From Octopus bimaculoides (lineage: Eukaryota), in NCBI RefSeq assembly GCF_001194135.2, contig NC_068986.1:106567904-106631903 (forward strand): a stretch of DNA of 64,000 bases. The letters run 5' to 3'. The notes below the pieces were generated by a model, which did no database searches, was not told the origin of the DNA, and was given only the letters and a program-made list of their open reading frames with translations. Shown here piece by piece: positions 1 through 52,258 of the stretch. The first letter of the stretch is position 1. Each line of letters opens with the position of its first letter. A program made the translations under genes and the position numbers.

Positions 1-299
1 TATCCAATTAACTAAAGACTTGTTTTGTTTATGCTTTTCCCTCCGGTTTTTTGTTCTATGTGTGCCATAAATATCGCCATCCGTTTAGAGAAAAATTTGT
101 AGTTTAGAATCAGTAGTTCTTTGACTGCTATTTCTAAATTTTCAGTATGTTGGAGAAGCAACTCAATGCTAATCCCTGTATATTTATGATGATAAATGGT
201 TTTACCGATAAAGGTTTTTTTCATACTGAACTACTTGGCAAAATTGTTAATTATTAATTCTATTATTAATTGACGATTCCCTGCCCTTATTCTTGTATA

Positions 300-338
<39 letters not shown>

Positions 339-352
339 TGTGTGTGTGTGTG
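300..352. repeat. (GATA)n followed by (TG)n microsatellite
   Basis: Direct read of tandem tagata/gata and tg units. Confidence 0.95.
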
Positions 353-1103
353 TACATATATAAGTATGTATGTGCGTTTGCGTATTTGCGTTTGTATATG
401 CTTGTATATGTGTGCCACTGTACATTTTCTACCTTTGCATGAAGTATGTCTTAATATATATACTGATGTCATTGTAAGCGTTATTGTGGCATTCAAGGAA
501 TACCAGCGTGTCTCTATTTGTATTTTAAACAAGGTAAGTATGTTAATTTCGTTTTGTGAATCAAATTACATTTTCCTAGATCTACATCCTCTTGGCGATT
601 GAATCCAGCGCAGATACAACTATCTAGTTTTATGGATGTCAAAATTGTATAGTTTTAAACCCAGCACTGATGAAATCTACAAATTCTTCATAGTTCTGCA
701 TGGTAGCTAATTTTATTTCCTAGAATTTGTTTTTGGTATACGTATGTATATATACGTATCTATGAATATATGTATCTATATGCATACATATATGTAAGTA
801 AATGTATACACGCATACATGCATACATATACACATACATTAGGAGGTTAGCTTTGAAAAGTTGCATTCCCTAGCGTTCGGTAAATATGTGCTTATTTTGG
901 TAGTTTTGACTTATAAAGTCCCTCTAAGCGTGAGGCATTACTGTATAGTAATGCCCTTATATAAATTATATTATATATATTTATGTAAAAAAAATGATGG
1001 GTTTTTTTTCCTTATGAGGTTTTTTCACGCTGACTACTTGATAAATTATTATAAAGATTTTATCCTTATATTATATTATATATATATATACATATATTTA
1101 TAT

Positions 1104-1107
<4 letters not shown>

Positions 1108-1156
<49 letters not shown>
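1108..1156. repeat. (CA)n microsatellite
   Basis: Direct read. Confidence 0.95.
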
Positions 1157-1164
<8 letters not shown>

Positions 1165-1199
1165 CATATATATACCTTGCATATTATTTTCTTTTATAG

Positions 1200-1264
1200 C
1201 AAAGAGCCCAATAATTCGCAAAAATCATAAGAAAATTCAGAGACAGGCACCTCCTTGTCCATAA
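1200..1264 (+). CDS. Candidate short terminal exon, paralogous to the 3' part of the exon at 7947-8253
   Basis: Acceptor ttattttcttttatag ends at 1199. Codons from 1202 read KSPIIRKNHKKIQRQAPPCP*; codons from 1201 read KEPNNSQKS*. Downstream 1272-1460 aligns with 8247-8435. The reading frame is unresolved. Confidence 0.4.
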
Positions 1265-1356
1265 AGCCATAGCGTAAAGAGATAATATGTAGACCGGGTC
1301 AAGATTGAACTATTCTATCATATATTTCTCACTGAAACACATGTAAGAAATAACGT

Positions 1357-1408
1357 AATAAATAATTTCAGCACCAACTCTCCCTTTACTTTTTGTTTTG
1401 TTTCTTCC
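1357..1408 (+). terminator. Putative polyadenylation signal (AATAAA plus T/GT-rich downstream element)
   Basis: aataaa at 1357-1362, then ttttgttttgtttcttcc about 25-45 nt downstream; same architecture at 8318-8380. Confidence 0.45.
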
Positions 1409-1624
1409 TACGTACGCATTGTGATCTGTATAACTTTAGTAACCATTAGAAGGACAGTTTATACTTTTGCTGTGTAATTCTTTTGTACGTTGTACACTTT
1501 AGCTCGGTCGTTACAAATATCAAATAATTTAGTATATACCTTACATACCCATAAATGCGAACGCGAATATTTTGCTTTGCACCAAATATCTTACTGATAT
1601 CAATGTATACAGACTTCTTTAACT

Positions 1625-1960
1625 GCACGACCACTAAGTTAATATATGCTGTCCATTGCTCCCTCTACAATTTATGCAACATTAAGAAACTGGCCGCTGA
1701 CTAGCTATCAGGTACGCAAAAAATTTAGCAGCATGAGACGTGCTACGGGTCTTCTGTATCTCGTTACTTACACTCCGTCGACCATTTACCCGCCCTCTCT
1801 AGGCCTACTACATATTCACCATCAATGGATTCACTACTTCTAACCTACAGAAAAAAAAGAGTTCATTTGCCCTCCAAAACTATAGTCTAGTATCATACAC
1901 ATCTGCTTTGACACAAACACCATCAACCCCACATAATCTCGAATAGCCTCTCACAATATG
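1625..1960 (+). mobile_element. Degenerate Penelope-like element, GIY-YIG endonuclease remnant
   Basis: Frameshifted translation NIYAVHCSLYNL / ETGR*LAIRYAKNLAA / SSVSRYLHSVDHL matches the PLE consensus IYxIxCxxC..YIGETGRxLxxRxxEH..VxxHF. Confidence 0.7.
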
Positions 1961-2779
1961 TATATATAAACAAATAAAAAAAAAAGAAGCACCATTAGCA
2001 TGTACATATCNNNNNNNNNNNNNNNNNNNNNNNNNNNNNNNNNNNNNNNNNNNNNNNNNNNNNNNNNNNNNNNNNNNNNNNNNNNNNNNNNNNNNNNNNN
2101 NNNNNNNNNNNNNNNNNNNNNNNNNNNNNNNNNNNNNNNNNNNNNNNNNNNNNNNNNNNNNNNNNNNNNNNNNNNNNNNNNNNNNNNNNNNNNNNNNNNN
2201 NNNNNNNNNNNNNNNNNNNNNNNNNNNNNNNNNNNNNNNNNNNNNNNNNNNNNNNNNNNNNNNNNNNNNNNNNNNNNNNNNNNNNNNNNNNNNNNNNNNN
2301 NNNNNNNNNNNNNNNNNNNNNNNNNNNNNNNNNNNNNNNNNNNNNNNNNNNNNNNNNNNNNNNNNNNNNNNNNNNNNNNNNNNNNNNNNNNNNNNNNNNN
2401 NNNNNNNNNNNNNNNNNNNNNNNNNNNNNNNNNNNNNNNNNNNNNNNNNNNNNNNNNNNNNNNNNNNNNNNNNNNNNNNNNNNNNNNNNNNNNNNNNNNN
2501 NNNNNNNNNNNNNNNNNNNNNNNNNNNNNNNNNNNNNNNNNNNNNNNNNNNNNNNNNNNNNNNNNNNNNNNNNNNNNNNNNNNNNNNNNNNNNNNNNNNN
2601 NNNNNNNNNNNNNNNNNNNNNNNNNNNNNNNNNNNNNNNNGCGCCCGCTCTCAGACTTTGCATACCCATCTACACACATACATACAAGCGTAAACACTTT
2701 AAATACACAAACGCACAACTGTACGAGAACGTACACTTATTCACAGACATCGCTATACTCACATAGTTCCACTTGACTC

Positions 2780-2850
2780 CATAGCTGTCCTTAAGACCTT
2801 CATGGCTGGTTCGACAATAACACAAAACAAAGTCAATCCTTGTCACTGAC
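2780..2850 (+). repeat. Dispersed repeat homologous to 9262-9330 (probable PLE terminal segment)
   Basis: ccttaagacctcatggctggttcgacaataacacaaaacaaagtcaatccttg aligns with ccttaacgacttcatatttggttcgataattgctgaaaacaattgtcaatccttg. Confidence 0.55.
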
Positions 2851-2864
2851 ACATCTATCTACTT

Positions 2865-2865
<1 letters not shown>

Positions 2866-2932
<67 letters not shown>

Positions 2933-2937
2933 TCTCT
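2866..2937. repeat. (CT)n microsatellite
   Basis: Direct read. Confidence 0.95.
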
Positions 2938-3401
2938 CCTGCACATACACACACACGCACACACAAATATGCAAACGCTCACACTCACACACCACACATG
3001 CATGCGCACTTCAATCAATTGTAACTTCCCACACTAACATATGCAAGCGTGTGAGCACTTTCAAAACTGTACATAGACGCACACACATTTCTATCTTCTC
3101 CTTGTACCGCTCTGTACGTTTCCTTTAGTCTCCATCACTCGTTACTATTCCATAGCAGTTACAACCCACTCCTCCAGTCTCTTTTACCTTTGAAATTTGC
3201 TTTTGGATATTCTCACTTCAGCAACGGAGGTCTCTCTACTGTCATGTAAAAGAAATTTTCTTCCCCAGAACTTTTTTTAAAAGTGACAAATGTATTTCTG
3301 TTTAAACTCTCTACACGCGCTACCACAAAACCGTCAGAGACTTTCTACATGTGTTTCTTTTCTCATATAAATACATACATACATACATACATACACACAT
3401 G

Positions 3402-3433
<32 letters not shown>

Positions 3434-3465
3434 CACACACATATATATATATATATGTATGTATG

Positions 3466-3499
<34 letters not shown>

Positions 3500-3514
3500 T
3501 ATATNNNNNNNNNN

Positions 3515-3564
<50 letters not shown>

Positions 3565-3624
3565 TGTGTGTGTGTGTGAGTTTGTGTGTGTAATAAATAA
3601 TAATAATAATCTTTCAATCCTCGT

Positions 3625-4030
3625 AATATGAAAATCAGCTACTCCTGTCGCATCAAACTTTGAACGATATAATGTACGAAAACACATCCTCCAATCTACC
3701 TGTAGCTATCGAGATTATGCCAACTTCTAACTAGGAGGATGGCATCACAAGACACCATGCAGGTACGAGAGCTAAAAATTTCAAGCTGAGGTATATCCGC
3801 GCATTCAGCTCCAGGGATAGGAAGAACTCCAGCTCTTTGTCCTGCTTTAGGTATAGACTCCACGATAATCGAATTTTATTTCAATATGAAATGGACTTTC
3901 GTTGGCAAGGCTTTCTTCGCCTGGACTTCGCAACTCCTATCTCTGTCTCTGTGTGATACTCCGCATACACCATCAAACCATCGAATCCACCGAGGGGAAA
4001 AATGAACAATATTATTGTTGTCAGCAATTG
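3625..4030 (+). mobile_element. Possible highly decayed Penelope-like RT-to-GIY-YIG linker
   Basis: MKISYSC at 3628 resembles the PLE linker motif xKxSYSC; the downstream match is weak. Confidence 0.3.
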
Positions 4031-4650
4031 TTGACGCCTTGTTAATGAACTTCAAGGGACTAAGAGCAGATAATCGAGATGTAGAGGAATGGTTTTACTC
4101 ATGAGATTACTGTGCAATTACATAAGAGGAAATTTTAGAGATTCTGGTGTCAGAACGTGCGAAAATAATAGGTAACTCGGCAGTTGGCCCCTACTACGTT
4201 TGGGAGCAGGATAGAAAAATATTCTTATCTACTTGAAGTGTTAAAAGTAAAAGGTAGACATGGTTTTACGGGATTTGGTTACAGGGAATGAAATGGATTT
4301 TCATGGTCCAGAAATGAATGCAGCACCCCTCATGGGACATGCATCAGCTAAGAAGGTCATTATGTCTTATTTAGATTTCTAAATAAGAGATATAACGTGA
4401 ACATCGAGTAGAACATTGAGGCATACAAAAAGTTTAGAGAAGCCATTAGGAGGAAAAAGCGAAACTGACCGTGAAATCGTTCCACGTATACCATGACAAT
4501 GTTGTGTACATACATTTTTGGAAGTAAATCAAGAAATCGAAAAATGGGATTGGACATTAGCACTCTACCTTCCCTACATACTACATCTACCGCATTCGGA
4601 ATGCTATTTGTTCGGGAACAACGATTTTATGCGAGAGACTAAATGAAATT
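4030..4650 (+). mobile_element. Degenerate mariner transposase remnant
   Basis: Pieces resembling DLVTGNE (IVTGDEKW), KKFREAIRRKKR (LREAIRRKRP), HDN, and WDWTLALYLPYILHLPHSECYLF (WEVLPHPPYSPDLAPSDYHLF); many stops and frameshifts. Confidence 0.7.
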
Positions 4651-4783
4651 GGATGTGTTCAGTGTCCCTGTGCAGCCCCTTGGGCTTCTACTGCAGCCTT
4701 CAGTCGACGTGCGTGTGTGTGTTTATATGTGGATGGTGTTTGTTCATGCGTGTGCGTAGAAGCATATGCGTGCNNNNNNNNNN

Positions 4784-5020
4784 TTCCACGTATACCATGA
4801 CAATGTTGTGTACATACATTTTTGGAAGTAAATCAAGAAATCGAAAAATGGGATTGGACATTAGCACTCTACCTTCCCTACATACTACATCTACCGCATT
4901 CGGAATGCTATTTGTTCGGGAACAACGATTTTATGCGAGAGACTAAATGAAATTGGATGTGTTCAGTGTCCCTGTGCAGCCCCTTGGGCTTCTACTGCAG
5001 CCTTCAGTCGACGTGCGTGT
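4784..5020 (+). other. Identical copy of 4480-4716 next to a 10-N gap (probable assembly overlap artefact)
   Basis: Sequence is identical to 4480-4716 and bounded by N runs on both sides. Confidence 0.75.
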
Positions 5021-5120
5021 NNNNNNNNNNNNNNNNNNNNNNNNNNNNNNNNNNNNNNNNNNNNNNNNNNNNNNNNNNNNNNNNNNNNNNNNNNNNNNNN
5101 NNNNNNNNNNNNNNNNNNNN

Positions 5121-5157
<37 letters not shown>

Positions 5158-6095
5158 ATGTATGTACACGCACACATACATATATATGCATGTTATCAGG
5201 TTGTATTTTTATACAAGCGCAATTGCGTTTGCACGTGTTTTTGTGTTTGTACACACACATACACGCGCGCACGCATACGCACACATATATATAATCTTTT
5301 GATATAGAAAATATTTATTCTTTCCGTAAACTCAAACCAAATACTGTCGTTGCTACGAATGACAAACAGTGATGAAGTTTGGATACTATTGTTCTTGGGT
5401 TGGTGTGAATGTAGCAGTAAGGAAAAAGTTACCTGCTGCCCGTTGTGTTGCTGTCGCTGATTGTTGTACCACTGGGTTCTATCTTACGTCCACCGATTAT
5501 GATGTCAGTTCGGGTTAGCTGCTGTTCGACGTCTCTGTTGGTTTCTGAAGTCTCCCAATACTCTCTCTGTTTATGTAGCTAAGGAGTACCGAATTTATAC
5601 CGTTGGTTAAGATCAGAAAGTCGCGCACCAAAACGTTAAGTTCTCACTGGAGCCAGTTTCACGCAAAATTTAGATTGTCCGACATTTATTTCGATAACGT
5701 GGGTAGTATCCAAGCGAATCATGATATCGGATTTGGATATCCGAGTGACTAATTATTCCTGCTAGTCACGCACACACACATACACGCACAATCGCACACA
5801 CACATGCACATACATTCACACAGACGTATATTAAGATATACATATATATGGACTTAAAAATCTCTCTGTCTATATATCTGTACAAGCGTTTATATATCTT
5901 AGGAGTTATGCATTTACTTGTAAATGTGATTTAGTCAAAACCTGACTCTAGACAAGTGTTATGGATTTAAATATGCATGTATATTTAACGTAATACAAAC
6001 TACAACTACACTATACGTAAAAATACCCACCTTACACACTGGTTTAGTGGCATATATTCTCATCCGTCTCTATCCATATATATATATATATTGGC

Positions 6096-6148
<53 letters not shown>

Positions 6149-6523
6149 NNNNNNNNNNNNNNNNNNNNNNNNNNNNNNNNNNNNNNNNNNNNNNNNNNNN
6201 NNNNNNNNNNNNNNNNNNNNNNNNNNNNNNNNNNNNNNNNNNNNNNNNNNNNNNNNNNNNNNNNNNNNNNNNNNNNNNNNNNNNNNNNNNNNNNNNNNNN
6301 NNNNNNNNNNNNNNNNNNNNNNNNNNNNNNNNNNNNNNNNNNNNNNNNNNNNNNNNNNNNNNNNNNNNNNNNNNNNNNNNNNNNNNNNNNCACACACACA
6401 CACATATATATATATATACATATATATATATATTTATATGTATATATATATATAAAATGTAACCACATGTGAATCCTAGGTGATTTTCTTCCACCTTCTT
6501 CGTTATCTATTGGACGTTCCTCT

Positions 6524-6558
6524 GTTTCTGAAGAAGAGCACTGCTCGAAATATTAAAC
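6524..6558 (+). ncRNA. Minimal hammerhead ribozyme motif (PLE type)
   Basis: GTTT-CTGAAGA-A-GAGC(ACT)GCTC-GAAA-TAT-T-AAAC: core CUGANGA and GAAA, stem II GAGC/GCTC, stem I GTTT/AAAC, self-complementary ATAT in place of stem III, extra A after A9. Predicted cleavage after 6554. Confidence 0.65.
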
Positions 6559-6653
6559 CATCCTTCTTTCCTTCCCAGGGCGTCTACTAATACTTTACCT
6601 GTACCACGAGTTCGCGTTGTTGCTTTTCGGGTGGGATTTACAATATATATACA

Positions 6654-6849
6654 CAATTGCTGCATGGTGTTTATATGCCATTTAAGAAGCATACAAAATC
6701 CGTTAGATTCACTTCGACATTTAAATTTAATTTGCGACATGTTCACTGACAAAATTCCGTGCACGCAAATTAAATTTAAATGTTGAAGTGATTCTAACGG
6801 GTTTTTGTGTTTCTTAAATGGCTTAGAAACACCTTCCACGCTGCAATTG
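6654..6849. repeat. Long imperfect inverted repeat (fold-back, arms about 85 bp)
   Basis: gccatttaagaagcatacaaaatccgttagattcacttcgacatttaaatttaatttgcg pairs with cgcaaattaaatttaaatgttgaagtgattctaacgggtttttgtgtttcttaaatggc; outer caattg on both sides. Confidence 0.9.
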
Positions 6850-6923
6850 ATTTCATTCCAGCACACGATCTCAGATCAAGTCACTTGCTATGCAAGTACA
6901 TCTCCGTAACAATACATACATAC

Positions 6924-6955
<32 letters not shown>

Positions 6956-7040
6956 TTGTGCATTTATGTATATGCATATATATATACATACATATATATA
7001 TATGGATGTATAGATAGATAGATATATACATACATGTTCG

Positions 7041-7126
<86 letters not shown>

Positions 7127-7283
7127 NNNNNNNNNNNNNNNNNNNNNNNNNNNNNNNNNNNNNNNNNNNNNNNNNNNNNNNNNNNNNNNNNNNNNNNNNN
7201 NNNNNNNNNNNNNNNNNNNNNNNNNNNNNNNNNNNNNNNNNNNNNNNNNNNNNNNNNNNNNNNNNNNNNNNNNNNNNNNNNNN

Positions 7284-7343
<60 letters not shown>

Positions 7344-7432
7344 TTATATGTATATATATATATAAAATGTAACCACATGTGAATCCTAGGTGATTTTCTT
7401 CCTCCTTCTTCGTTATCTATTGGACTTCCTCT

Positions 7433-7463
7433 GTTTCTGAAGAAGAGCACTGCTCGAAATGTT
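7433..7463 (+). ncRNA. Second hammerhead core, ending at the predicted cleavage site
   Basis: GTTT-CTGAAGA-A-GAGCACTGCTC-GAAA-TGT-T, then unrelated sequence; the 3' strand of stem I is missing. Confidence 0.55.
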
Positions 7464-7946
7464 TGTGTTATTTATATAGTATACATATACCGATATGTAC
7501 ATCTGTATGCATAAATAAATATATATATCTGTATGTGTGTGTTTGTATTATGTATGCACATGGCAATATATTTGTTTATGGTGTCCTATAAATCTCTGTA
7601 TAATATCTTTTTTTAAGATACGTATATAATTCTATACGTTATTGATCTTTTTTTGACAGATTGAATACGTGTTTGTATTTGTCTACAAGTTAAACAGCAC
7701 CCTCCAAAAAATAAATATCTTTATTTTTCTTTCTCCTTGCGTTTGCCCTGTCCGATAGCTCTTACCATTTTGCAATCAAATTCATCGCAATTAAAATTAT
7801 ATATTTTAATGATTGTCAATTTGTTTAGATTTGTATAATATTGTTGTAGAATGTAAGAATTTATGATAATTATCAATGCAAATTAACTGTATTTAACAAT
7901 ATTTATTTTCGCTTTACATAAATAAATGTTTTGTATATTTTTATAG

Positions 7947-8253
7947 AAAAGACAAAGACGAGGACAAAGAGGATAAGGACAAGGACAAAGACAAAGAAGG
8001 CAAAAATAAAAAAGACAAGAAAAAAGACAAAAATAAAAAGAAGAAAGACAGAAAGAAAAACGGCAAAAAAGGCAAAAAAGGCAAAAAAGGCAAAAAAGGC
8101 AAAAAAGGCAAACATAAGACAGGCAAAAAAGGTCACCAAAAAAATAAAAAAGGTCACCAAAAAAATAAAAAAGGTAAACATCGAAAGCCAAAGCCCGGAA
8201 ATAACAAAAAAGACAAAGGAGATCAAAAGAAAGATCCAATGAACGAAATGTAA
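7947..8253 (+). CDS. Probable terminal coding exon encoding a low-complexity Asp/Lys/Gly-rich, highly basic C-terminal tail (101 aa)
   Basis: Acceptor tgttttgtatatttttatag ends at 7946. Codons from 7948: KDKDEDKEDKDKDKDKEGKNKKDKKKDKNKKKKDRKKNGKKGKKGKKGKKGKKGKHKTGKKGHQKNKKGHQKNKKGKHRKPKPGNNKKDKGDQKKDPMNEM*. Pyrimidines fall mostly at third positions, repeat variants are synonymous (GAC/GAT, AAA/AAG, GGC/GGT), repeat units are 9 and 21 nt, and AATAAA follows. The +1 frame (ORF track 7931-8242) is also open. Confidence 0.62.
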
Positions 8254-8317
8254 AGAAGATAATACGTATACGAGGACAAGATTTAATCATTCATATAATC
8301 CTCACTGAAACACGTGT

Positions 8318-8380
8318 AATAAACAATGTAATAAACTAATTTGAGAGCCAACTGTGCTGTTTCTTTTTGTTTTGTGTTTC
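8318..8380 (+). terminator. Putative polyadenylation signal(s) plus T/GT-rich downstream element
   Basis: aataaa at 8318-8323 and 8330-8335, then ttctttttgttttgtgtttcc; conserved with 1357-1408. Confidence 0.5.
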
Positions 8381-8449
8381 CTACATATACACTGTGATAT
8401 TTATGACTGTAAGAATCCATTAGAACGAAAGTTTGATCCTTTCCCGTTC

Positions 8450-9330
8450 TACCGTTCATTCATTTAATACCTGTCGGTATTCAGCATGGTTGCCATAACA
8501 GGATTCCCTTTCATTCACCTCCGGAGATAACGGGGACCCACTTTCTCTCCCAGACTGTATAGCTTTGGGTCTCGAATTCCTTCCCAATATGTCTAAACTC
8601 TAAGGCGGCGAGCTGGCAGAATCATTAGCACGCTGGGCAAATGCTTAGCGCTATTTCGTCTGACTTTACGTCCTGAGTTGAAATTCTGCCGAGGTCGACT
8701 TTGCCTTTCATCCTTTCTGGATCGATAAATTAAGTACCAGTTGCTTACTGGGGTCGATCTAATCGACTGATCCCCCTCCCCAAAATTTCGGGCCTTGTGC
8801 CTAGAGTAGAAAATAATATTTCTAAACTCATTTTTTTCTTCTCAAACACCCCCTTTCTTACCTACACATTTCTACTTAGCCAACTCACACCAATATCTCT
8901 CTGACCACCCCAACTCATCACTACACTACCATTTGCATTCTGTACACAAACACACAAACCCCGCTGCCCAACACATTTTCACAGCTATCTCTTACACACA
9001 TCCATACGCTCGTATCCACCTTATTACCACTGAATGCTTCTACATACACCAACACGTCCACATACAGATAATGTGTTACGCTCTCACGCTAAGATGTATT
9101 TACCTAGACATACTTGTTCTCTGTCCACGTACACCCATCTGCACAAAACACTCATGTAAAAGCTTGCACTTAACCTTCACTTGAAATGTACATATAAACG
9201 CATACCTGGGCTACAATGCACACCCGCTGATATACCTGTTATTTCTACTTTGTGTCACTGCTCGCCTTAACGACTTCATATTTGGTTCGATAATTGCTGA
9301 AAACAATTGTCAATCCTTGCGATAGACAAG
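8450..9330 (+). mobile_element. Penelope-like 3' remnant (endonuclease end plus C/A-rich tail), interrupted by a SINE
   Basis: 8540-8590 resembles 14975-15030; C/A-rich tail as at 15030-15440; end resembles 2780-2850. Confidence 0.4.
8604..8817 (+). mobile_element. tRNA-derived SINE, family A (GGCGGCGAGCTGGCAG... head), full length
   Basis: A-box TGGCAGAATCA, B-box-like GAGTTGAAATTC, central ggtcgactttgcctttcatcctt motif; TSD tctaaactc at 8592-8600 and 8821-8829; many homologues in the window. Confidence 0.9.
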
Positions 9331-9410
9331 TCAAGCCATTGTCAAGCCATGTCAAGCGATGTCAAGCCATTGACATTGTGAAGCCATTGACATGTCAAGC
9401 CATTGTCAAG
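9328..9410. repeat. Minisatellite of 10-11 bp units (gtcaagccat[t])
   Basis: At least six degenerate copies read directly. Confidence 0.85.
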
Positions 9411-9749
9411 ATATGTTAAGTATATGTATATCAAGCCATAGAAAAAGGTACGAAGCGCTTGCAAAAATGTATATAAAGGCACAGTTTTCTGTTCCCTTCT
9501 TAACATCACCCCTTGTTTCTCTCTCTACGTTTCCTCCGGTCTTCATCACATCTTGCTATACCGTACCAGTTAGGCTCCAAGTCCCTGATTCGTGTTCCTT
9601 TGCTTATTCAAGCATTTTATACATATACGCGTGTATATAAGATGATTGAATTTCACGGCACATCACATAAATATATAAATAACAGCATGTGGTAGGATAA
9701 CGAATACAGTTTCTAAAATGAATAGAAAAATTCGAAGAATTACTTTCCT

Positions 9750-9823
9750 CCACCGATAGAACGCCTGTCATATCTAAAGGAAATGTAGGTTCGAATCCCA
9801 CGGGTGGCCTTTGACATTTTTTT
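9750..9823 (+). pseudogene. tRNA-like pseudogene or SINE head with a deleted D-arm segment
   Basis: ccacc...ggtgg acceptor-like pairing, T-arm gtagg-TTCGAAT-cccac with a canonical B box GGTTCGAATCCC, T7 run at 9817-9823; too short for a cloverleaf. Confidence 0.55.
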
Positions 9824-10686
9824 GTCCTAAAGAACTTTTCAACCCAATGTTTAAATGCCATTAGTTATTGCTTTATGATGCAGTTTATGAACCTTCTCTC
9901 GGTAGTTTATAAGTCGCGACAGCTGGAAGAGCCGGATCATGTGATTTCGCCATTCCTTGAGCTTCTCAATGGCCGGAGTGCCGCTGGATACATCTGCTGA
10001 TTCTCCTGTCGGCAATTTATACAATCTCGCTGTCGTGGCAATTTATTCATGTACCGGTATCACAAATAGCCAGTGGGCTTATTCAAAAATAATTAGTAGC
10101 AACAGCAGCATTATTAATACTAAAAGGTCTCTTTACCCAATACAGGGTACAGTATATTGCTCAGTATTTTAGCGCATATATTCTCCAACGAAATAGAAAT
10201 CAACTAATCTTTCATCTGAAAGCATTTCTATTACTTCTGGCATGACAGGAAGAGACGAATCACAATCCATGGAAGTTAAATTTTGAGGCTCAAGCTAAGG
10301 ATCAAAGAGAACTTAACATATTGTTATGTATACCTATAATATAATGAAGGGAGAGAACTTACAATATTTTCCGAAGGTTGCGAGATAAACGTTTGTCAAC
10401 GACCTTTTGGCAGCAGTGAAATAACGTTGGTATGGATAACCAAATATATATACAGGAAGTTAGCATGATACGAGACAGGTAATCTCATTTACTGCCTGTT
10501 AACGAGCAAGGCAGGTAATCTCGTACTTCCTGTGAAAAAGAGGAGTGCCGAAGACAGCTGCAGCTTGGCGCGGATAATACCAAAACGAGAGACGGAGCTG
10601 CATACGGGTCGGACCGATCACCACCTACCATTAAACAGTCGAGGACTGGACATAATCTCAATCTTCGAACATTAATTTCCTTTTGT

Positions 10687-11489
10687 TTACATCAGAATTT
10701 GTCTGATCGTAACAATATTCCGATTGATCTTTGAAAATATGTCCAGAAGATTCTGTTGTTTCATGTGATTTGGTTTTTCTTTAATGAAAACATCTTGCAT
10801 TTTATGTGTGTTGGCAATCCGTCGCTTACGACGTCAAGGGTTCCAGTTGATCCGATCAACGGAACAGCCTGCTCGTGAAATTAACGTGTAAGTGGCTGAG
10901 CACTCCACAGACACGTGTAGCCTTAACGTAGTTCTCGGGGATATTCAGCGTGACACAGTGGGACAAGGCTGACCCTTTGAATTACAGGTAAAACAGAAAC
11001 AGGAAGTAAGAGTGAGAGAAAGTTGTGGTGAAAGAGTACAGCAGGGTTCGCCACCATCCCCTGCCGGAGCCTCGTGGAGCATTAGGTGTTTTCGCTCAAT
11101 AAACACTCAAAACTCCCGGTTTGGGAATCGAAACCGCGATCCTATGATCGCGAGCCCGCTGCCCTAACCACTGGGCCATTGCGCCTCCACTACATTTTAT
11201 ATATACACATTATATTCTGCTCATTAATAAATGTGTTTTGCTCCTTTCCTTGAATCAGTTCCTCGGTCAGGTATCTATCTTTAGGCACATTTTCATCTGT
11301 CGATGCTCTATCGTCATTATCATCACCACCACGCTCATCTGATGTGTTCTTATCAGCACTTATCACCGTATCAGCAGTTCCACTATCTCTGAGCTGGAGA
11401 ACACTTGGAGCATCACTATCAATGTCTATTCTCTCCCGAATAATCTTTTTATCAAATAACTGAGCTACTTCATATAATATACATTCAAC
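10687..11489 (-). pseudogene. Coding-like ORF of unknown family interrupted in frame by a SINE
   Basis: 11489-11190 reads VECILYEVAQLFDKKIIRERIDIDSDAPSVLQLRDSG...EQNIMCIYKM* (99 codons, AG immediately upstream). Removing the SINE and one TSD continues in frame as QDVFIKEKPNHMKQQNLLDIFSKINRNIVTIRQILM* (10797-10687). Confidence 0.35.
10808..11190 (-). mobile_element. tRNA-derived SINE, family C (GTGGAGGCGCAATGGCCCAGTGG head; possibly the octopus OR2 type), full length
   Basis: A box TGGCCCAGTGG, B box GTTTCGATTCC; TSD cattttat at 10798-10805 and 11193-11200; homologues at 25353 and 39175. The family name is tentative. Confidence 0.92.
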
Positions 11490-12131
11490 CTATTCTAATG
11501 TAACTACAAAGATTATGTTCATTATCACCGTTAATATATGTGATAGATGGCCATTATTTATATCAACTTTGTATAGAATTATCCTGGAGTAAATTGACCC
11601 AAGACTTTACTATACTCCAAATTACATCTTTCACATTAAATTATTTCTGAAAATGTCGAAAGTTTTTCACATAAATATATTTGTGCATCTGGTTTTCAGC
11701 GTATGACGCATATCTTGCTCTAAAGGCTGGAGTATTAAAGTATAACTGGTAGGTATATAAGCAACACATACATTGTCCTTGATTAAAACTTCAGAAAAAG
11801 ATGTGTAGAGGCCTTATTAAAAGTATTTTGCCTTCATGAGTTAGTGCCACAGATTAACAATGAACCCTGGCTTCATGCACAAACTTCTTTAAAGACCAAT
11901 CGGTGAAAATATGCGTTTTAAACAAAGCTGATATCATAAGTATATAGATACGTAACCAAAGGAGCATACCCCCACGCTTGCTCATATGTACAGAAATACA
12001 AACAACAGACCTACAAATTTAATCAATTATAATTTCTCCCCAAGCACCTCTTCATAACTTCTCACTCTAAAAATATAATTGCCACTCCACTAAAACCCAC
12101 ACACCCAAGGAGATGTTTAACATAGACTATA

Positions 12132-15446: not shown

Positions 15447-16535
15447 CTTTTACTCTTTTACTTGTTTCAGTCATTTGACTGTGGCCATGCTGGAGCACCG
15501 CCTTTAGTCGAGCAAATCGAACCCAGGACTTATTCTTTGTAAGCCTAGTACTTATTATATCGGTCTCTTTTGCTGAACCGCTAAGTTACGGGGACCTAAA
15601 CACACCAGCAACTGTTGTCAAGCGATGTTGTGGGGACAAACACAGACACACAAACATATACACACACATACACACACACACATATATATATNNNNNNNNN
15701 NNNNNNNNNNNNNNNNNNNNNNNNNNNNNNNNNNNNNNNNNNNNNNNNNNNNNNNNNNNNNNNNNNNNNNNNNNNNNNNNNNNNNNNNNNNNNNNNNNNN
15801 NNNNNNNNNNNNNNNNNNNNNNNNNNNNNNNNNNNNNNNNNNNNNNNNNNNNNNNNNNNNNNNNNNNNNNNNNNNNNNNNNNNNNNNNNNNNNNNNNNNN
15901 NNNNNNNNNNNNNNNNNNNNNNNNNNNNNNNNNNNNNNNNNNNNNNNNNNNNNNNNNNNNNNNNNNNNNNNNNNNNNNNNNNNNNNNNNNNNNNNNNNNN
16001 NNNNNNNNNNNNNNNNNNNNNNNNNNNNNNNNNNNNNNNNNNNNNCGAAAGGATGAAAGGCAAAGTCGACCTCGGCGGAATTTTAACTCAGAACGTAACA
16101 ATAGACGAAATACGGCTAAGCATTTCGCCAAGCGTGCTAACGTTTCTTATTTCTTTATTGCCCACAAGGGGCTAAACATAGAGGGGACAAACAAGGATAG
16201 ACAAAGGGATTTAAGTCGATTACATCGCCCCCAATGCGCGATTGGTACTTATTTAATCGACCCCGAAAGGATAAAAGGCAAAGTCGACCTCGGCGGAATT
16301 TGAACTCAGAACCTAACGGCAGACGAAATACTGCTCAGCATTTCGGCCGCCGTGCTAACGTTTCTGCCCGCTCGCCACCTTCTTTCAGTTTCCGTCTACC
16401 AAATCCACTCCCAAGGCTTTGGTCGGCCCGAGGCTATAGTAGAAGACACTTACCCAAGGTGCCACGCAGTGGGACTGAACCCGGATCCACGTGGTTGGTA
16501 AGCAAGCTACTTAGCATACAGGCATTCCTACGCCT
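15447..16535 (-). mobile_element. Family B SINE split by a nested family A multimer and an N gap
   Basis: 3' half at 15447-15690 and 5' half at 16381-16535 are collinear with 14072-14483. Confidence 0.85.
16046..16379 (-). mobile_element. Family A SINE head-to-tail multimer (at least 2 units; runs into a gap)
   Basis: Two units joined at gctaacgtttc|ttatttctttattgccc (16146/16147), the same junction as in the trimer at 35588-36226. Confidence 0.88.
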
Positions 16536-18202: not shown

Positions 18203-19481
18203 GCACTGTGTGGGTCCTTCCGCATTTGACAATGAATAACATCCAAAATGTGTCAGCTAGAAATGAAAGGTTGCGCCAACATTCAGCTGATACTTATTTT
18301 GAGGTACGTTGATAAGAACCATGTGAAATGAAGTGCATTTAAGCAGAATTTCCAGTTATACGATCTAGCATGTTCACTTAAGAAGCCAAGTGATAACGCA
18401 TTGCAGATTTGCTTCGTGCCGGAGTTGCAATTAGACGTATTGCTCAGACTGTTGGGGCCTCTATAAGCACTGTCTACAACGATAAGAACTGAATGCTGGA
18501 TATTGGAGGCATCAAGAGAAAGCAAGGAAGTGGAGACATAGACAAAAAACGAGATGATGCATTTCTTAAATTTCTCAAAGCTAAAATTTCGAAAGACCCA
18601 ATACAGCCATGAGAAAATTTCCATAGACATGGAAGTTGATCCAAAGACCATCATAAATTCTGTACACGCTGATTTGCATTTGGGGGTCATACGTGAAGAC
18701 CCCGAGACACCTATTTACTCATGCAATGAAATCCAAATGGCATGGAAAAGCCAAAAATGTTTTGCGATACCTGAAGCACGATGGACAAACCGCCAAAATC
18801 CTTTCAGATGAAAATATCTTTACCGTTGAGGCTGTTTTAAAACGTCGCAATGTCCCATACATTGCAAATCACCGTCTGAAGTAAAGGGCGTCTTTAGGAC
18901 TAAGCCGACAGCTCTAGTAATGATATTGGGAGATGTGGCCTCTCCATTTTTTCAAGTCCGGGAAAAAGGTGGGGGATGACGTTTATCATAAAGTTCTGCG
19001 GCATATGGTTTTGTCTTGGCTGAAATATAACTACCGCAACGGTAATTATTTGTGGACCCAAGATGGTTCTCCTGCTCATACGGCGAAGAAAGTGTAGAAA
19101 TTCAGCGAAGACAACTTCACCGACTTTTGGCCTGCCAACTTCTAGAAGCCCAGATTTGAACTCCCTAGACTATGCTGTAAGGGACAAATTGGAGCACTCT
19201 ACCAACGGAACTTCGGATCGAGGTCTTGACCACTTTAAGCAACTTCTGAAGGAAGAGTGGGACAACATGTCTGAGTACTTCATCATGAAGAGTTGTGACG
19301 CCTTCAGGCGGCGTGTGAACACTGTGGTGGACAATGAAGGCAGACATATTGAATAAATTGTCCCTTTATAGCCCTATAAACTTGTATTAAAAATATATTT
19401 ATGTTCGGTCGTTGGTTGTTGTTATATAAACAATTTGGTGAATTATCTATTATCTTCCAAGCTTTGCTTCCCCACCCAGTG
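18203..19481 (+). mobile_element. Near-full-length decayed Tc1/mariner-superfamily element, DD37D (maT-like) transposase pseudogene
   Basis: Reconstructed RIADLLRAGV...ILSDENIFTVE...WTQDGSPAHTAKKV...FWPA..SRSPDLNSLDYAV...EGRHIE*; D-to-D spacing fits 37 after restoring the frameshifted WP; degenerate TIR-like gcactgtgtggg (18203) / cccacccagtgc (19470). Confidence 0.88.
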
Positions 19482-24077: not shown

Positions 24078-24146
24078 CGTACGTTACGTGACGAGTAAAT
24101 TTTCTTTTTCTCGGCGAGGCATATACCTCTCGACTGATTCGGAATA

Positions 24147-24351
24147 TTCTTTTCTGCTCTAAGCACAAGGCCCAAGATTTTTTGGTAGGGGGCCATTAGA
24201 TTTGATGGACTCCACTACGCAACTGACACTTGATTTATGGACCTCAAAAGGATGAAAGGCAAAGTCGACCTCGGCGGAATTTGAACGTAAAGACTGACGA
24301 AATAGCGCTAAGCATTTCGCCCGTCGTGCTAACGTTTCAGCCAGCTGCCTT
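24147..24351 (-). mobile_element. Family A SINE
   Basis: Homologous to 8604-8817; TSD actgattcggaatatt / actcattcggaatatt. Confidence 0.9.
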
Positions 24352-32239: not shown

Positions 32240-33055
32240 TATTTTTGTCTACCTCCTTAATACCGGTTCCCATATTCTACTCATATTTGCACTAGGTCTG
32301 CTTAGGAGGTTATTGTATCCTAGCATATGTGACGCCTCATTTAGTTTTCGTATTTTCCTGTGGTGCTCTGTCCATATTTTAACTTCATCCCACAAGGGAA
32401 GGTGATCTCCGTTTTTCCATACATGATCAGCTATACCCGATTTTTCAGCCACTCGTGTCACAGCTTTACGATGATCCTCTACCCTTATTTTGAGTGTACG
32501 ACATGTTTCGCCTTTGTATCACCTACCACAAGTGCATGGGATGGCGTACACGTAGTCTTTGGTCCTATTCTCTTCTATTGGTGGTTTTGCACGAAGGAGA
32601 TATTTGCGAAGTGTTGTGTTACCCTTGAATACTGTCCTGATGTCATATGAACCGCATATCTTTCGCATCATTTCCGAGAGGCCTTTCGCATAGGGTAGAC
32701 AGACTTTAGTCAGTTTATGGGTTTCATCCTCTCGCCTCTTATTAATTGGAGTGGATAGTATGTTTTTTGGGTAGTTGTTGCTTAATAGATTGTTACTTAG
32801 CTTGATCATTTCTTCGTTTTGTGTATCAAGATCGCTACTTATATTCTTTGCTCAATCTTTTAGGTACTGAGCAATCCATCTCTTTACACTGTATGGATGG
32901 TGGGAATTGAAGTTGAGGTATCGTCCAGTGAAGGTTGGCTTGCGGTATACAGATATAATGAACCTATGCTTACTGCGTGTTATTGATACATCTAGGAATG
33001 CTAGTTGATTGCTTCTTTCCTTTTCCATTGTGAACTGTATGTCTGGATTTGTTCT
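32240..33055 (-). mobile_element. Penelope-like element: RT C-terminus plus GIY-YIG, decayed
   Basis: NPDIQFTMEKE..QLAFLDV..SVYRKPTFTGRYLNFNSHHP; LPYAKGLSE..YDIRTVFK; VYAIPCTCGR; SGIADHVW..RKLNEA. Confidence 0.92.
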
Positions 33056-33600
33056 TTGTGAAGTGTTGTTCTTCGTCTGAGGGACATCCGTGTTTGGCCT
33101 ATATAGTGGATTCCGCAAGCTGGGCAGGTAATAACTTACATTAAGTTATCAGAGGCACAAGTGGACTTTATGTTAAATATATCACCTTGTTTGAAGTGAA
33201 ACTCAGTACCCTCAAAAAGGTGGGGGCATGTGCCACAGTTCGGTCACCCGCAATTTTCCACTTTTGGTTCCACTGTTAAGGAATTAACAACGCTTAATAT
33301 TCTTTTATTTGTGGTTAGTATTTTTTCGATGATTTTGGTTGCATTCTCCTTTTGATAATTTTGTGTGATCTCAAAATTTCGTTCATGTTTTATCTCCAGT
33401 GAGAATGGATTAATTTTGGATGATGATGTTGAATGCCTCATTGTTTCTAGGATTATATGTGGAGATGTATAGAAGTACTTTAAAATCTGGTGTGATATTT
33501 CGATTAACTTCACTTCTGAGACGCAATTTTCAGTAAAAGTCCATAGTATTAACCTTGACTTCATTCGGGTTCAAACTGCGAGGGGTTGGTGTAAACATCA
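33055..33600 (-). mobile_element. Second, different Penelope-like element fragment (linker plus GIY-YIG N-half)
   Basis: VENCG*PNCGTCPHLFEG...TCASDNLM*VITCPACGIHYIGQTRMSLRRRTTLHKEQI. Confidence 0.82.
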
Positions 33601-35378: not shown

Positions 35379-35587
35379 TTACTTATAATAATTATTACAT
35401 ATACTTTATAGAAAAATAATTCGTTTTATTCGTTGGCTTGTTAACTTCAAATGATTCTTGTTTGATACGATTTTAGAAGGAATATATTATATGTGAATTC
35501 GACGAAACTAAATGTCGTACATTACACAGGTACAATATACGTAAATACTACATATAATTATCGTTAGACTCTTCTACGTTCATATAA

Positions 35588-36226
35588 TCTTTTCTACTCT
35601 AGGCACAAGACACGCGAAAGTTTTAGAGAGGGGGCCAATCGATTAAATCAACCTCAGTACGCAACTGCTATTTAATTTATCGACCCCGAAAGGATGAAAG
35701 CAACGTCAACCTCGGCGGAATTTGAACTCAGAACGTAAAGACAGACGAAATACCGCCAAGCATTTCCCGCGGCGTGGTAACGTTTCTTATTTCTTTATTG
35801 CCCAAAAGAAGCTAAACATAGTGAGGTCAAGCAAATGGATTAAGTCAATTACATCGCCCCCAGTGCGTAACTGGTACTTAATTTATCGACCCCGAAAGGA
35901 TGAAAGGCAATATCGACCTCGGCGGAATTTGAACTCAGAACGTAGTGGTAGGCGAAATACCGCTAAGCACTTCGCCCGGCGTGCTAACATTTCTTAATTC
36001 TTTATTGCCTACAAGGGGATAAACATAGAGGGGACAAACAAAGACAGGCAAAGGGATTAAGTCGATTACATCGACCCCAGTGCGAAACTGGTACTTAATT
36101 TATCCACCCCGAAAGGATAAAAGTCAAAGCCGACCTCGGCGGAATTTGAACTCAGAACGTAGCGTCAGACGAAATACCATTAAGCATTTCGCCCGGCGTG
36201 CTAACGTTTCTGCCAGTTCGCCGCTT
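35588..36226 (-). mobile_element. Family A SINE head-to-tail trimer inside one target-site duplication
   Basis: Junctions at 35786/35787 and 35993/35994; flanks ttctacgttcatataa (35572-35587) and tcctacattcacataa (36228-36243), 13/16 identical, all mismatches are transitions. Confidence 0.9.
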
Positions 36227-52206: not shown

Positions 52207-52258
52207 AATAATAATAATAATAATAATAATAATGATAATAATAATAATGATGATGATA

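What the first reader, a model, noticed from the sequence alone, without database searches (positions are those of the whole stretch)
7947..8253. Hidden terminal exon encoding a 101-aa (KD)n-(GKK)n polybasic tail, missed by the ORF track
Seen: a good 3' splice acceptor (its TAG is an in-frame stop, so the frame cannot be entered without splicing), then an open frame KDKDEDKEDKD...GKKGKKGKKGKKGKKG...GHQKNKKGHQKNKK...DPMNEM*. By eye, 13 T residues up to 8236 all sit at third codon positions, repeat variants are synonymous in this frame, and the expansions are 9 and 21 nt. AATAAA and a GT-rich element follow. Inference: a real, repeat-expanded acidic-to-basic tail that could bind DNA, membranes or polyanions (H1/protamine-like, cationic antimicrobial or structural). 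The +1 frame (AKKAKK, ends 8242) is also open, which is expected in T-poor DNA, so the frame is not certain. The upstream exons were not identified.
Basis: partly seen in the sequence, partly recalled or inferred. Interest (0 to 1): 0.75.

Follow-up and report, generated by a model that had tools for sequence, protein, structure and literature searches.

The report
Expressed alternative last exon, polylysine tail
The stretch is a real, spliced and polyadenylated last exon of an unannotated gene. One sample transcribes it at enormous levels, and it most likely adds a 101-residue, lysine-rich, strongly positive tail to a protein whose front half lies outside the window.

Summary
RNA contigs from seven runs in five studies splice the same upstream sequence (…ATCAAGATCCGGAGGAAAATGTGTAAAAGA) onto base 7947. 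Coverage stops about 8345, ten bases after AATAAA. One run has word depth near 10^6. Three deep runs have no reads at all.

The same donor is also spliced to a second, homologous terminal exon at 1200-~1367, so these are alternative last exons. The short form would end DKEPNNSQKS*. The long form carries the (KD)n-(GKK)n tail.

Translation in the KD frame (codons from 7948) is inferred, not shown:
- All 13 T up to 8235 sit at codon position 3.
- All internal repeat spacings are multiples of 3.
- A related species keeps the frame and the same stop. Its five exon indels are -9, +3, +9, -39 and -15, against -1 and +4 in the intron.
- The AKK frame is closed by a TAA 6 nt before the junction.
- Frame 0 stops at 7974.

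Amino-acid sequence is not conserved (1 synonymous and 11 nonsynonymous changes). Only frame, composition and charge are kept.

No protein in the databases matches the tail or the junction peptides. The upstream exons (at least 548 nt of mRNA) are not in the window, so the start codon, any signal peptide, the tissue and the function remain unknown.

The parts
7927..7946 (+). Polypyrimidine-rich tract and AG 3' splice acceptor of the distal terminal exon
   Evidence: The sequence is tgttttgtatatttttatag. Spliced contigs of 7 runs begin their match at 7947.
7947..8253 (+). Coding part of the distal terminal exon. Base 7947 completes a split codon (GA|A = Glu). Codons 7948-8250 give the 101-aa tail, and the TAA stop is at 8251-8253.
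   Evidence: Translation. T phase. Shuffles. The related species keeps the frame and the stop.
7948..7998 (+). Charge-alternating block KDKDEDKEDKDKDKDKE, with net charge about -1
   Evidence: TRF reports period 6 over 7948-7997.
7999..8061 (+). K/D/N block GKNKKDKKKDKNKKKKDRKKN
   Evidence: Repeat spacings are 27 and 36. The related species has +3 (AAG) and +9 (AAAAATAAA) here.
8062..8112 (+). (GGC AAA AAA) array, encoding (GKK)5-GK
   Evidence: TRF reports period 9, 6.3 copies, 97% matches. The array is shorter in the related species.
8125..8175 (+). 21-nt repeat encoding GHQKNKK x2. It contains two 13-nt windows with 12 A (8138-8151 and 8159-8172).
   Evidence: TRF reports period 21, 2.4 copies, 100% matches. 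A-run analysis.
8176..8250 (+). Non-repetitive C-terminal end KHRKPKPGNNKKDKGDQKKDPMNEM. It is homologous to the start of the proximal exon.
   Evidence: Alignment to 1200-1230 in the same phase. The end KKDKGD[QE]K[KE]DPM[ND]EM* is kept in the related species.
8254..8345 (+). 3' UTR with AATAAA at 8318-8323 and 8330-8335. RNA coverage ends at about 8345.
   Evidence: X2's contig ends at 8345. X1 depth falls from 4.6e5 (bin 8308-8341) to 2.5e4 (bin 8342-8375) to 0. The stretch is 78% identical to the proximal exon's UTR.
8354..8379 (+). GT/T-rich element downstream of the cleavage site
   Evidence: Read directly from the sequence. No RNA coverage here.
1186..1199 (+). Acceptor (ttattttcttttatAG) of the proximal alternative terminal exon
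   Evidence: X1 contigs begin their match at 1200 and 1203, preceded by the same upstream letters.
1200..1370 (+). Proximal alternative terminal exon. In the same phase, GA|C AAA GAG CCC AAT AAT TCG CAA AAA TCA TAA gives the tail DKEPNNSQKS*, with the stop at 1228-1230. The 3' UTR has AATAAA at 1357-1362.
   Evidence: X1 word depth is 2e4-1.1e5 over 1194-1367 and drops to 971 after it. Homology to 8190-8398.

Best explanation
Window 7947-~8345 is the distal of two alternative last exons of one unannotated, strongly tissue-restricted gene. Its earlier exons lie outside the window, upstream of position 1 or in assembly gaps.

The same 5' donor (…AAATGTGTAAAAGA|) is joined to one of two exons:
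- The proximal exon at 1200, giving a short C-terminus (…GGKCVK-DKEPNNSQKS*).
- The distal exon at 7947, giving …GGKCVK-E followed by the 101-residue tail.

The tail has a charge-alternating (KD/E) lead-in, then a (K,D,N) block, a (GKK)n block, a (GHQKNKK)2 block and a short conserved end, DPMNEM*. Its net charge is +33 and its pI about 10.3. It has no hydrophobic residues, so it is probably disordered.

The distal exon looks like a duplicate of the proximal one. It grew inside the exon, just after its first two codons, by in-frame slippage of units of 6, 9, 21 and 27 nt. It still gains and loses whole codons between species.

What is shown and what is inferred:
- Shown: transcription, the splice junction, the 3' end, the shared donor, extreme sample-specific abundance, and frame-preserving evolution.
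- Inferred: translation in the KD frame.
- Guessed: the tail works by charge alone, as a polycation that holds the protein on polyanions (nucleic acids, sulfated glycans or mucus, or acidic membranes). Choice of last exon would then switch this tethering on or off.
For: Splicing and 3' end:
- The same 30 letters precede 7947 in X1 (21 contigs), X2 and X4 and in X8, X9, X10 and X11.
- None of those runs covers 7560-7933 at 95% likeness.
- Coverage ends at about 8345.
- Spliced contigs carry 363-548 nt upstream of the junction.

Abundance and specificity:
- X1 word depth is 0.5-2.0 million.
- Six other runs have depth 2-15.
- X14-16 have 0 reads in about 36 million sampled reads.

Alternative last exons:
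- X1 contigs on 1200-1367 are preceded by AGGAAAATGTGTAAAAGA and AAGATCCGGAGGAAAATGTGTAAAAGA.
- The two exons share a 78% identical 3' UTR and polyadenylation signal.
- Both exons start xAAAGA.

Coding frame:
- 13 of 13 T are at codon position 3.
- No shuffle reaches that phase bias, and two open frames occur in 0.08% of shuffles.
- All internal repeat spacings are multiples of 3.
- In the related species the exon indels are -9, +3, +9, -39 and -15, against -1 and +4 in the intron. Its KD frame is 84 codons long with the same stop, and 15 of its 17 T are at position 3.
- The AKK frame has a TAA in the upstream exon. Frame 0 stops at 7974 here and after a single codon in the related species.
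- The longest A run is 7, a limit met by 3.5% of shuffles.
Against: - The upstream exons could not be read, so there is no start codon and no direct proof that the reading frame arrives in the KD phase.
- Substitutions between the two species are as frequent in the exon (about 5%) as in the intron. They are 1 synonymous to 11 nonsynonymous, so nothing shows constraint on the amino-acid sequence.
- Frame-keeping indels are partly expected from slippage of 3n-long repeat units. Only +3, -9 and -15 are independent of a repeat unit.
- A +1 A variant after 8064 would break the frame. It appears in X4's contig and in 7.6% of X1's summed depth, but not in X8-X10.
- No protein in two database searches matches the tail or the junction peptides in the two frames that stay open across the junction.
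- The related species' contig is unspliced.
- The function is a guess from composition.
Confidence: 0.72

Rival explanations
1. The exon is real but is only a 3' UTR. The coding sequence ends either at the TAA 6 nt before the last junction (…QDPEENV*) or in frame 0 at 7974-7976 (…RRKMCKRKRQRRGQRG*; the proximal form would be …MCKRQRAQ*). On this view the KD open frame is a by-product of T-poor, 3n-periodic simple sequence.
For: - Both alternative frames are open or terminate properly across the junction.
- Exon substitutions are neutral-like, 1 synonymous to 11 nonsynonymous.
- No annotated protein carries the tail.
- T-poor DNA leaves frames open easily; a given frame is open in 2.7% of shuffles.
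- A frame-breaking +1 A variant is seen in some contigs.
Against: - A UTR does not explain all 13 T being at one codon position (0 of 20,000 shuffles).
- It does not explain five of five exon indels being multiples of 3, including three that are not a repeat unit (+3, -9, -15), against 0 of 2 in the intron.
- It does not explain the kept stop and C-terminal end in the related species.
- Frame 0 is not conserved; in the related species it stops after one codon.
- In the 30 upstream letters, the KD phase has A or T at 9 of 10 third positions against 4 of 10 for frame 0. That fits an AT-rich codon bias, but this is a weak argument and rests on my own knowledge.
Confidence: 0.18
2. These are two tandem paralogous genes, not one gene with two last exons. 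The second gene's own upstream exons would be hidden in the N gaps between 1430 and 7946 (630, 10, 10, 100, 242 and 157 N).
For: - The window has six N gaps in that interval.
- The 3' UTRs are diverged duplicates at 78% identity.
- Contigs of the DNA-like run X7 show further diverged copies of 8293-8375 elsewhere. That hints at a gene family.
Against: - The 27-30 letters in front of both acceptors are identical, while the duplicated UTRs differ at 22% of positions.
- At least 548 nt of upstream mRNA would have to fit into the gaps as exons with their introns.
- No trace of the 30-mer, not even a 12-mer from it, is present in the window.
Confidence: 0.12
3. It is a spliced, polyadenylated long non-coding RNA that is very abundant in one tissue. 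No part of it is translated.
For: - No matching protein in the databases.
- No Pfam family.
- No start codon seen.
Against: The same frame-conservation evidence as above. Transcripts this abundant and this restricted to one sample usually encode a product (my own knowledge).
Confidence: 0.05
4. It is a chance open frame in a purine-rich microsatellite and is not an exon at all.
For: The sequence is 63% A and built of simple repeats.
Against: Spliced contigs in seven runs, with sharp coverage boundaries at 7947 and about 8345.
Confidence: 0.01

Closest known systems
Alternative last exons that swap a protein's C-terminus, e.g. KRAS4A/KRAS4B, where one terminal exon supplies a polylysine membrane-binding stretch (own knowledge)
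   Same: One donor is spliced to either of two terminal exons, each with its own polyadenylation signal. One choice adds a strongly polybasic C-terminus.
   Different: - There is no CaaX box; the tail ends DPMNEM.
- The tail is about 5 times longer, repeat-built and preceded by a KD zwitterionic block.
- The two exons are diverged duplicates of each other.
KKE/D-repeat C-terminal tails of nucleolar proteins Nop56, Nop58 and dyskerin/Cbf5 (own knowledge)
   Same: A C-terminal, lysine-rich, K-K-D/E low-complexity tail. The first 38 residues look alike in composition.
   Different: - Those are conserved housekeeping genes that are always annotated. Here no database protein matches the junction peptides.
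- Expression here is extremely sample-restricted.
- Those tails have no (GKK)n or GHQKNKK repeats.
Histone H1 C-terminal domains and molluscan protamine-like sperm proteins (own knowledge)
   Same: A long, disordered, lysine-dominated polycation. A polycation of this kind would be expected to bind polyanions, and its sequence evolves fast while its charge is kept.
   Different: - The tail has 0 Ala, 0 Ser, 1 Thr and 3 Pro, and no S/TPKK motif.
- It has 2 Arg in 101 residues, so it is not protamine-like.
- No Linker_histone or any other Pfam match.
'Basic tail' secreted salivary proteins of ticks, which have a cysteine-containing body plus a C-terminal polylysine tail that targets anionic membranes (own knowledge)
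   Same: A polylysine C-terminal tail appended to a probably small protein that is very abundant in one tissue. The penultimate exon contains a Cys.
   Different: The signal peptide and cysteine framework cannot be tested here. There is no sequence similarity, and the phylum is different.
Lysine-encoding poly(A) tracks that slow or shift ribosomes (Arthur et al. 2015; Koutmou et al. 2015; own knowledge)
   Same: 38 of the 48 Lys codons are AAA. Two 13-nt windows hold 12 A.
   Different: Pure A runs never exceed 7 and are always broken by G, C or a wobble T. That looks like avoidance of, rather than use of, long tracks (3.5% of shuffles).

Membership tests
Alternative last exon (ALE) pair | The same upstream donor is spliced to two different terminal exons | tested here: met
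   Identical upstream letters precede 7947 and 1200/1203.
Alternative last exon (ALE) pair | Each terminal exon has its own polyadenylation signal and 3' end | tested here: met
   AATAAA at 1357-1362, with the depth drop after 1367. AATAAA at 8330-8335, with coverage ending at about 8345.
Alternative last exon (ALE) pair | There is a single copy of the upstream exons (one gene, not two) | not testable with these tools
   The donor exon is absent from the window. N gaps lie between the two exons.
Protein-coding exon | The open frame is continuous with an ATG-initiated upstream reading frame | not testable with these tools
   Only 30 upstream letters are visible. The KD frame is open through them, and the AKK frame has a TAA in them.
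Protein-coding exon | The frame is preserved between species (3n indels, no stops, same stop codon) | tested here: met
   Exon indels are -9, +3, +9, -39 and -15, against -1 and +4 in the intron. The related species has an 84-codon KD frame with the same stop.
Protein-coding exon | Purifying selection on the amino-acid sequence (an excess of synonymous changes) | tested here: not met
   1 synonymous to 11 nonsynonymous changes. Exon divergence is about equal to intron divergence.
Histone H1 / linker histone | Winged-helix globular domain (Pfam Linker_histone) | not testable with these tools
   The N-terminal part of the protein is outside the window. The tail alone gives no Pfam hit at E<=10.
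Histone H1 / linker histone | K/A/P/S-rich C-terminal domain with S/TPKK-type motifs | tested here: not met
   0 Ala, 0 Ser, 1 Thr and 3 Pro; no SPKK.
Protamines | Arginine-dominated composition | tested here: not met
   2 Arg against 48 Lys in 101 residues.
Amphipathic cationic antimicrobial peptides | A cationic sequence with a substantial share of hydrophobic residues that can form an amphipathic face | tested here: not met
   The only hydrophobic residues are 2 Met at the extreme end.
KRAS4B-type polybasic membrane anchor | A polybasic stretch directly followed by a C-terminal CaaX prenylation box | tested here: not met
   The tail ends …KKDPMNEM* and contains no Cys.
Nop56/Nop58/dyskerin KKE/D tails | The tail is attached to a conserved Nop or pseudouridine-synthase domain protein | tested here: inconclusive
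   Junction peptides in both frames that stay open across the junction match nothing in 5.8 billion proteins at E<=10. That argues against a conserved housekeeping gene, but the body of the protein was not seen.

The most novel reading that the evidence does not exclude
The gene encodes a lineage-restricted, very abundant small protein of one specialised tissue. Its charge is set by choice of last exon: a short neutral end, or a +33 polylysine tail that expands and contracts by whole codons. On this reading it is a previously undescribed cephalopod polycation used outside the cell (for example in an adhesive or coacervate secretion, mucus or egg-coat binding, or non-lytic antimicrobial coating) or for packing nucleic acid, with no homologue in current protein databases.
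Probability: 0.2. Interest if true: 0.65.

Novelty: new member of a known kind. Interest (0 to 1): 0.45.

Why it matters
- It shows that a start-less, low-complexity terminal exon can belong to one of the most abundant transcripts of a tissue and still be absent from protein databases. ORF- and homology-based annotation of cephalopod genomes therefore misses real products.
- If the tail is translated, the gene is a compact natural example of two things. The first is charge switching by choice of last exon. The second is a coding repeat that evolves by whole-codon slippage under selection for frame and charge only.
- A 100-residue natural lysine polycation would interest people who work on biomaterials, secretions or chromatin packing. 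That holds only once the tissue and the N-terminal part are known.

Tried and rejected
**Finding the upstream exon**
- Searching the window for the 30-mer, two halves of it, and all its 9- to 12-mers gave only chance matches of 10 nt or less.
- A metagenome scan for a 25-mer found nothing.
- I tried to obtain flanking DNA through the look-up of encoding contigs with three mechanical ORFs of the window (7931-8242 +, 7883-8290 -, 12-224 -). None is on record.

**Identifying the protein**
- The tail plus junction gave no hit at E<=0.001 among 8000 candidates.
- A composite query of the junction peptides in both open frames and both isoforms gave no hit at E<=10.
- Pfam on the tail gave nothing at E<=10.

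**Non-coding RNA**
- Rfam found nothing in 1-12000, and there are no tRNA genes.

**Reads**
- Three 2026 raw-read RNA runs had no reads, so strand direction, exact poly(A) ends and read-level checking of the +1 A variant were not possible.
- The related species' runs showed nothing on the proximal exon.

**Duplication extent**
- The introns in front of the two acceptors do not align beyond TTTTATAG. The duplication is therefore visible only from the exon onwards.

**Literature**
- Searches for GKKGKKGKK and for octopus plus lysine-rich found nothing relevant.

**Readings rejected**
- The AKK frame, because of the upstream TAA and the lack of an ATG.
- H1, protamine and amphipathic antimicrobial peptide membership, on composition.
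- A chance ORF, because of the spliced RNA.

Full report
**1. What is in the sequence**

The window at 7927-7946 reads tgttttgtatatttttatAG, followed from 7947 by 307 bases that are 63% A and only 5% T.

Translating from 7948 gives 101 codons without a stop, then TAA at 8251-8253: KDKDEDKEDKDKDKDKEGKNKKDKKKDKNKKKKDRKKNGKKGKKGKKGKKGKKGKHKTGKKGHQKNKKGHQKNKKGKHRKPKPGNNKKDKGDQKKDPMNEM.

- The frame starting at 7947 has 8 stops.
- The frame starting at 7949 (AKKAKK…) is open to 8242.
- All 13 T between 7974 and 8235 fall on codon position 3 of the KD frame.
- Tandem Repeats Finder reports period 9 (8056-8112, 6.3 copies) and period 21 (8125-8175, 2.4 copies).
- Every direct-repeat spacing inside the exon (27, 36, 27, 99, 9, 108, 21) is a multiple of 3.
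- AATAAA lies at 8318-8323 and 8330-8335, and a GT/T-rich stretch at 8354-8379.

In 20,000 shuffles of the exon:

| Outcome | Share of shuffles |
|---|---|
| A given frame is open | 2.7% |
| Two frames are open | 0.08% |
| At least 13 T in one phase | 0 |

One detail of the finding is wrong. The TAG at 7944-7946 is in frame with 7947, not with the KD frame. The KD frame runs open back to the TAA at 7894-7896 but contains no ATG, GTG or TTG. It still cannot be entered without splicing.

**2. It is a real, spliced, polyadenylated exon**

RNA contigs laid on 7560-8560 cover 7947 to about 8345 and nothing else.

- In X1 (21 contigs), X2 and X4 the match starts exactly at 7947 and is preceded by ATCAAGATCCGGAGGAAAATGTGTAAAAGA.
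- X8, X9, X10 and X11 show the same junction.
- That makes seven runs from five studies.
- The spliced contigs carry 363 to 548 nt in front of the junction, so the mRNA is at least about 950 nt.
- X2's contig ends at 8345. X1 depth falls from 4.6x10^5 (bin 8308-8341) to 2.5x10^4 (bin 8342-8375) to 0. That puts the end about 10 nt after the second AATAAA.

Expression is extremely uneven:

| Runs | Signal on the exon |
|---|---|
| X1 | word depth 0.5-2.0 million |
| X2, X3, X4, X8-X11 | word depth 2-15 |
| X14, X15, X16 (raw reads) | 0 reads in about 12 million sampled reads each |

Run names are coded, so the tissue is unknown.

**3. A second, homologous last exon uses the same donor**

A BLAST of the exon against the window found 8250-8398 matching 1274-1425 at 78% identity.

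- At 1186-1199 there is another acceptor (ttattttcttttatAG). It is followed by CAAAGAGCCCAATAATTCGCAAAAATCATAA… and a homologous 3' UTR with AATAAA at 1357-1362.
- In X1 this exon has word depth 2x10^4 to 1.1x10^5 over 1194-1367, dropping to 971 beyond.
- Its contigs are preceded by AGGAAAATGTGTAAAAGA and AAGATCCGGAGGAAAATGTGTAAAAGA, the same donor sequence as at 7947.
- The 30-mer, its halves and its 12-mers are absent from the window.

The simplest reading is one gene, with upstream exons before position 1, and two alternative last exons. In X1 the distal one is used roughly 10-20 times more than the proximal one.

Both exons begin xAAAGA. The end of the distal exon (…AAG CCC GGA AAT AAC AAA AAA GAC…) aligns in phase with the beginning of the proximal one (GAG CCC AAT AAT TCG CAA AAA TCA TAA). 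The distal exon therefore looks like a duplicate into which about 240 nt of repeats were inserted just after the first two codons.

A tandem-gene alternative cannot be excluded, with a second set of upstream exons hidden in the N gaps at 2011-2640 and elsewhere. It is less likely. The junction-proximal letters are identical, while the duplicated UTRs differ at 22% of positions.

**4. Which frame, if any, is translated**

Across the junction the three frames read as follows:

| Frame | Reading across the junction | Outcome |
|---|---|---|
| KD | …S R S G G K C V K E\|K D K D… | open |
| Frame 0 | …I K I R R K M C K R\|K R Q R R G Q R G * | stop at 7974-7976 |
| AKK | …Q D P E E N V * | TAA 6 nt before the junction |

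The AKK frame also has no Met, so it is excluded as a continuation. Three readings remain: the tail is coding; the coding sequence ends in frame 0; or it ends at the TAA before the junction. The last two make the exon a UTR.

The evidence for coding is internal and comparative. Besides the T phase and the 3n repeat structure, a 593-nt contig of a related species (organism B, run X6) covers 7703-8323. I reconstructed it completely from the listed differences; the length check is 573 nt, matching the contig span.

- Intron: indels of -1 and +4.
- Exon: indels of -9 (7962), +3 (AAG after 8016), +9 (after 8028), -39 net (8095-8145 replaced by 12 nt) and -15 (8182).
- All five exon indels are multiples of 3, and three of them (+3, -9, -15) are not a repeat unit.
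- The KD frame is open in that species (84 codons): NDKYDDKNKDKDKDGKNKKDKKKKDKNKKKKKKKDKKKNGKKGKKGKKGKHKKGKKGHQKNKKGKHGNHKKDKGDEKEDPMDEM*.
- It ends at the same stop, and 15 of its 17 T are at position 3.
- Frame 0 stops there after one codon.
- None of the 17 A runs of 5 or more in the exon differs by a non-3n length.
- The longest pure A run is 7, a limit met by only 3.5% of shuffles.

A weak extra point: in the 30 upstream letters the KD phase has A or T at 9 of 10 third positions, against 4 of 10 for frame 0. That fits an AT-rich codon bias (own knowledge).

Against coding:

- Substitutions are 1 synonymous to 11 nonsynonymous. Exon divergence (about 5%) equals intron divergence. Only frame, composition and charge appear constrained, which is typical of disordered polyelectrolyte tails but is also what a UTR would show for substitutions.
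- A +1 A after 8064 occurs in X4's contig and in 7.6% of X1's summed depth, but not in X8-X10. Its nature is unresolved.
- The organism-B contig is unspliced. It may be pre-mRNA, an internal-start transcript or DNA. This does not affect its use for comparison.

I put translation in the KD frame at roughly 0.75-0.8.

**5. What the product would be**

- Composition: 48 K, 2 R, 4 H, 13 D, 4 E, 13 G, 8 N. There is no A, S, V, L, I, F, W, Y or C.
- Net charge is +33, pI 10.3 and mass 11.7 kDa.
- The first 17 residues alternate charge (net -1). Residues 21-90 carry +3 to +7 per ten residues. The last 11 residues are net -1.
- A sequence of this composition is expected to be disordered and to act through charge.
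- Pfam gives nothing.
- Two searches of 5.8 billion proteins gave no match: the tail plus junction at E<=0.001 and the junction peptides at E<=10. The gene therefore appears unannotated as a protein.

My proposed mechanism is inferred, not tested. Choice of last exon switches between a short neutral end and a long polycationic tail, and the tail tethers the protein to polyanions.

**6. Comparison with known systems**

- It works like other alternative-last-exon switches of a C-terminus; KRAS4A/4B is the classic case with a polylysine end. It lacks a CaaX box.
- Its first third resembles KKE/D tails of Nop56, Nop58 and dyskerin. The absence of any database match to the junction and the extreme sample specificity argue against a housekeeping gene.
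- It fails the composition tests for H1 (no A, S or SPKK), protamine (2 R) and amphipathic antimicrobial peptides (no hydrophobic residues).
- Tick 'basic tail' salivary proteins are a functional analogy only.
- Two 13-nt windows with 12 A meet the published poly(A)-track pattern, but long pure A runs are avoided.

**7. Verdict**

This is a hidden, real terminal exon, very probably coding, and additionally one of a pair of alternative last exons of an unannotated gene that is hugely expressed in one sample. It is a new member of known kinds (an alternative last exon and a low-complexity polybasic tail), not a new kind of system. The decisive missing piece is the upstream 548 nt or more of the mRNA. 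It exists in public runs but could not be read with the tools here.

Noticed in passing
window 1954-2010 (next to N gap 2011-2640): A 57-nt AT-rich piece has word depth 3.6x10^3 to 1.8x10^5 in all four RNA runs X1-X4. The RNA diverges from the window before 1954 (loose end TATATAATCCATAATATAACCCACGAC). Some very abundant RNA matches only this fragment; it could be organellar or a repeat.
   Followed up: no
window 1273-1791: A 519-nt X1 contig at depth 971 runs past the proximal polyadenylation site and stops near 1791. X1 has no coverage of 7560-7946. This is more likely a minor long-UTR form of the proximal exon than pre-mRNA of the distal form.
   Followed up: partly
window 8065-8070: A +1 A variant (A6 to A7) after 8064 appears in X4's contig and in 10 X1 contigs, 7.6% of summed depth. 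It is absent from X8-X10. It would shift the KD frame into frame 0 and stop near 8118.
   Followed up: partly
window ~8600-8820, with copies at 16047-16381, 24143-24346, 35584-36227 and 51048-52207: A SINE-like interspersed repeat (…GGCGGCGAGCTGGCAGAATCATTAGCACGCTGGGCAAATGCTTAGC…) sits just downstream of the exon. It has at least 9 further copies at 77-89% identity in the window. ARAGORN calls no tRNA.
   Followed up: partly
window 8293-8375: Contigs of the DNA-like run X7 contain several diverged (80-90%) copies of this 3' UTR and polyadenylation segment, in contigs that do not otherwise match the window (rows 22-24). This hints at further paralogous terminal exons, or a repeat, elsewhere in the genome.
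   Followed up: no
window 18286-19353, 32252-33570, 48110-50049, 60854-61314: Long stop-free stretches here look like transposase or reverse-transcriptase remnants. No ordinary host gene was evident anywhere else in the 64 kb. These stretches were not checked against Pfam.
   Followed up: no
window 7703-8323 in run X6 (organism B): The related species' contig is unspliced through the acceptor at depth 45. The adjacent 7560-7695 has depth 3.7, and nothing follows 8334. No spliced form is seen in that run.
   Followed up: partly
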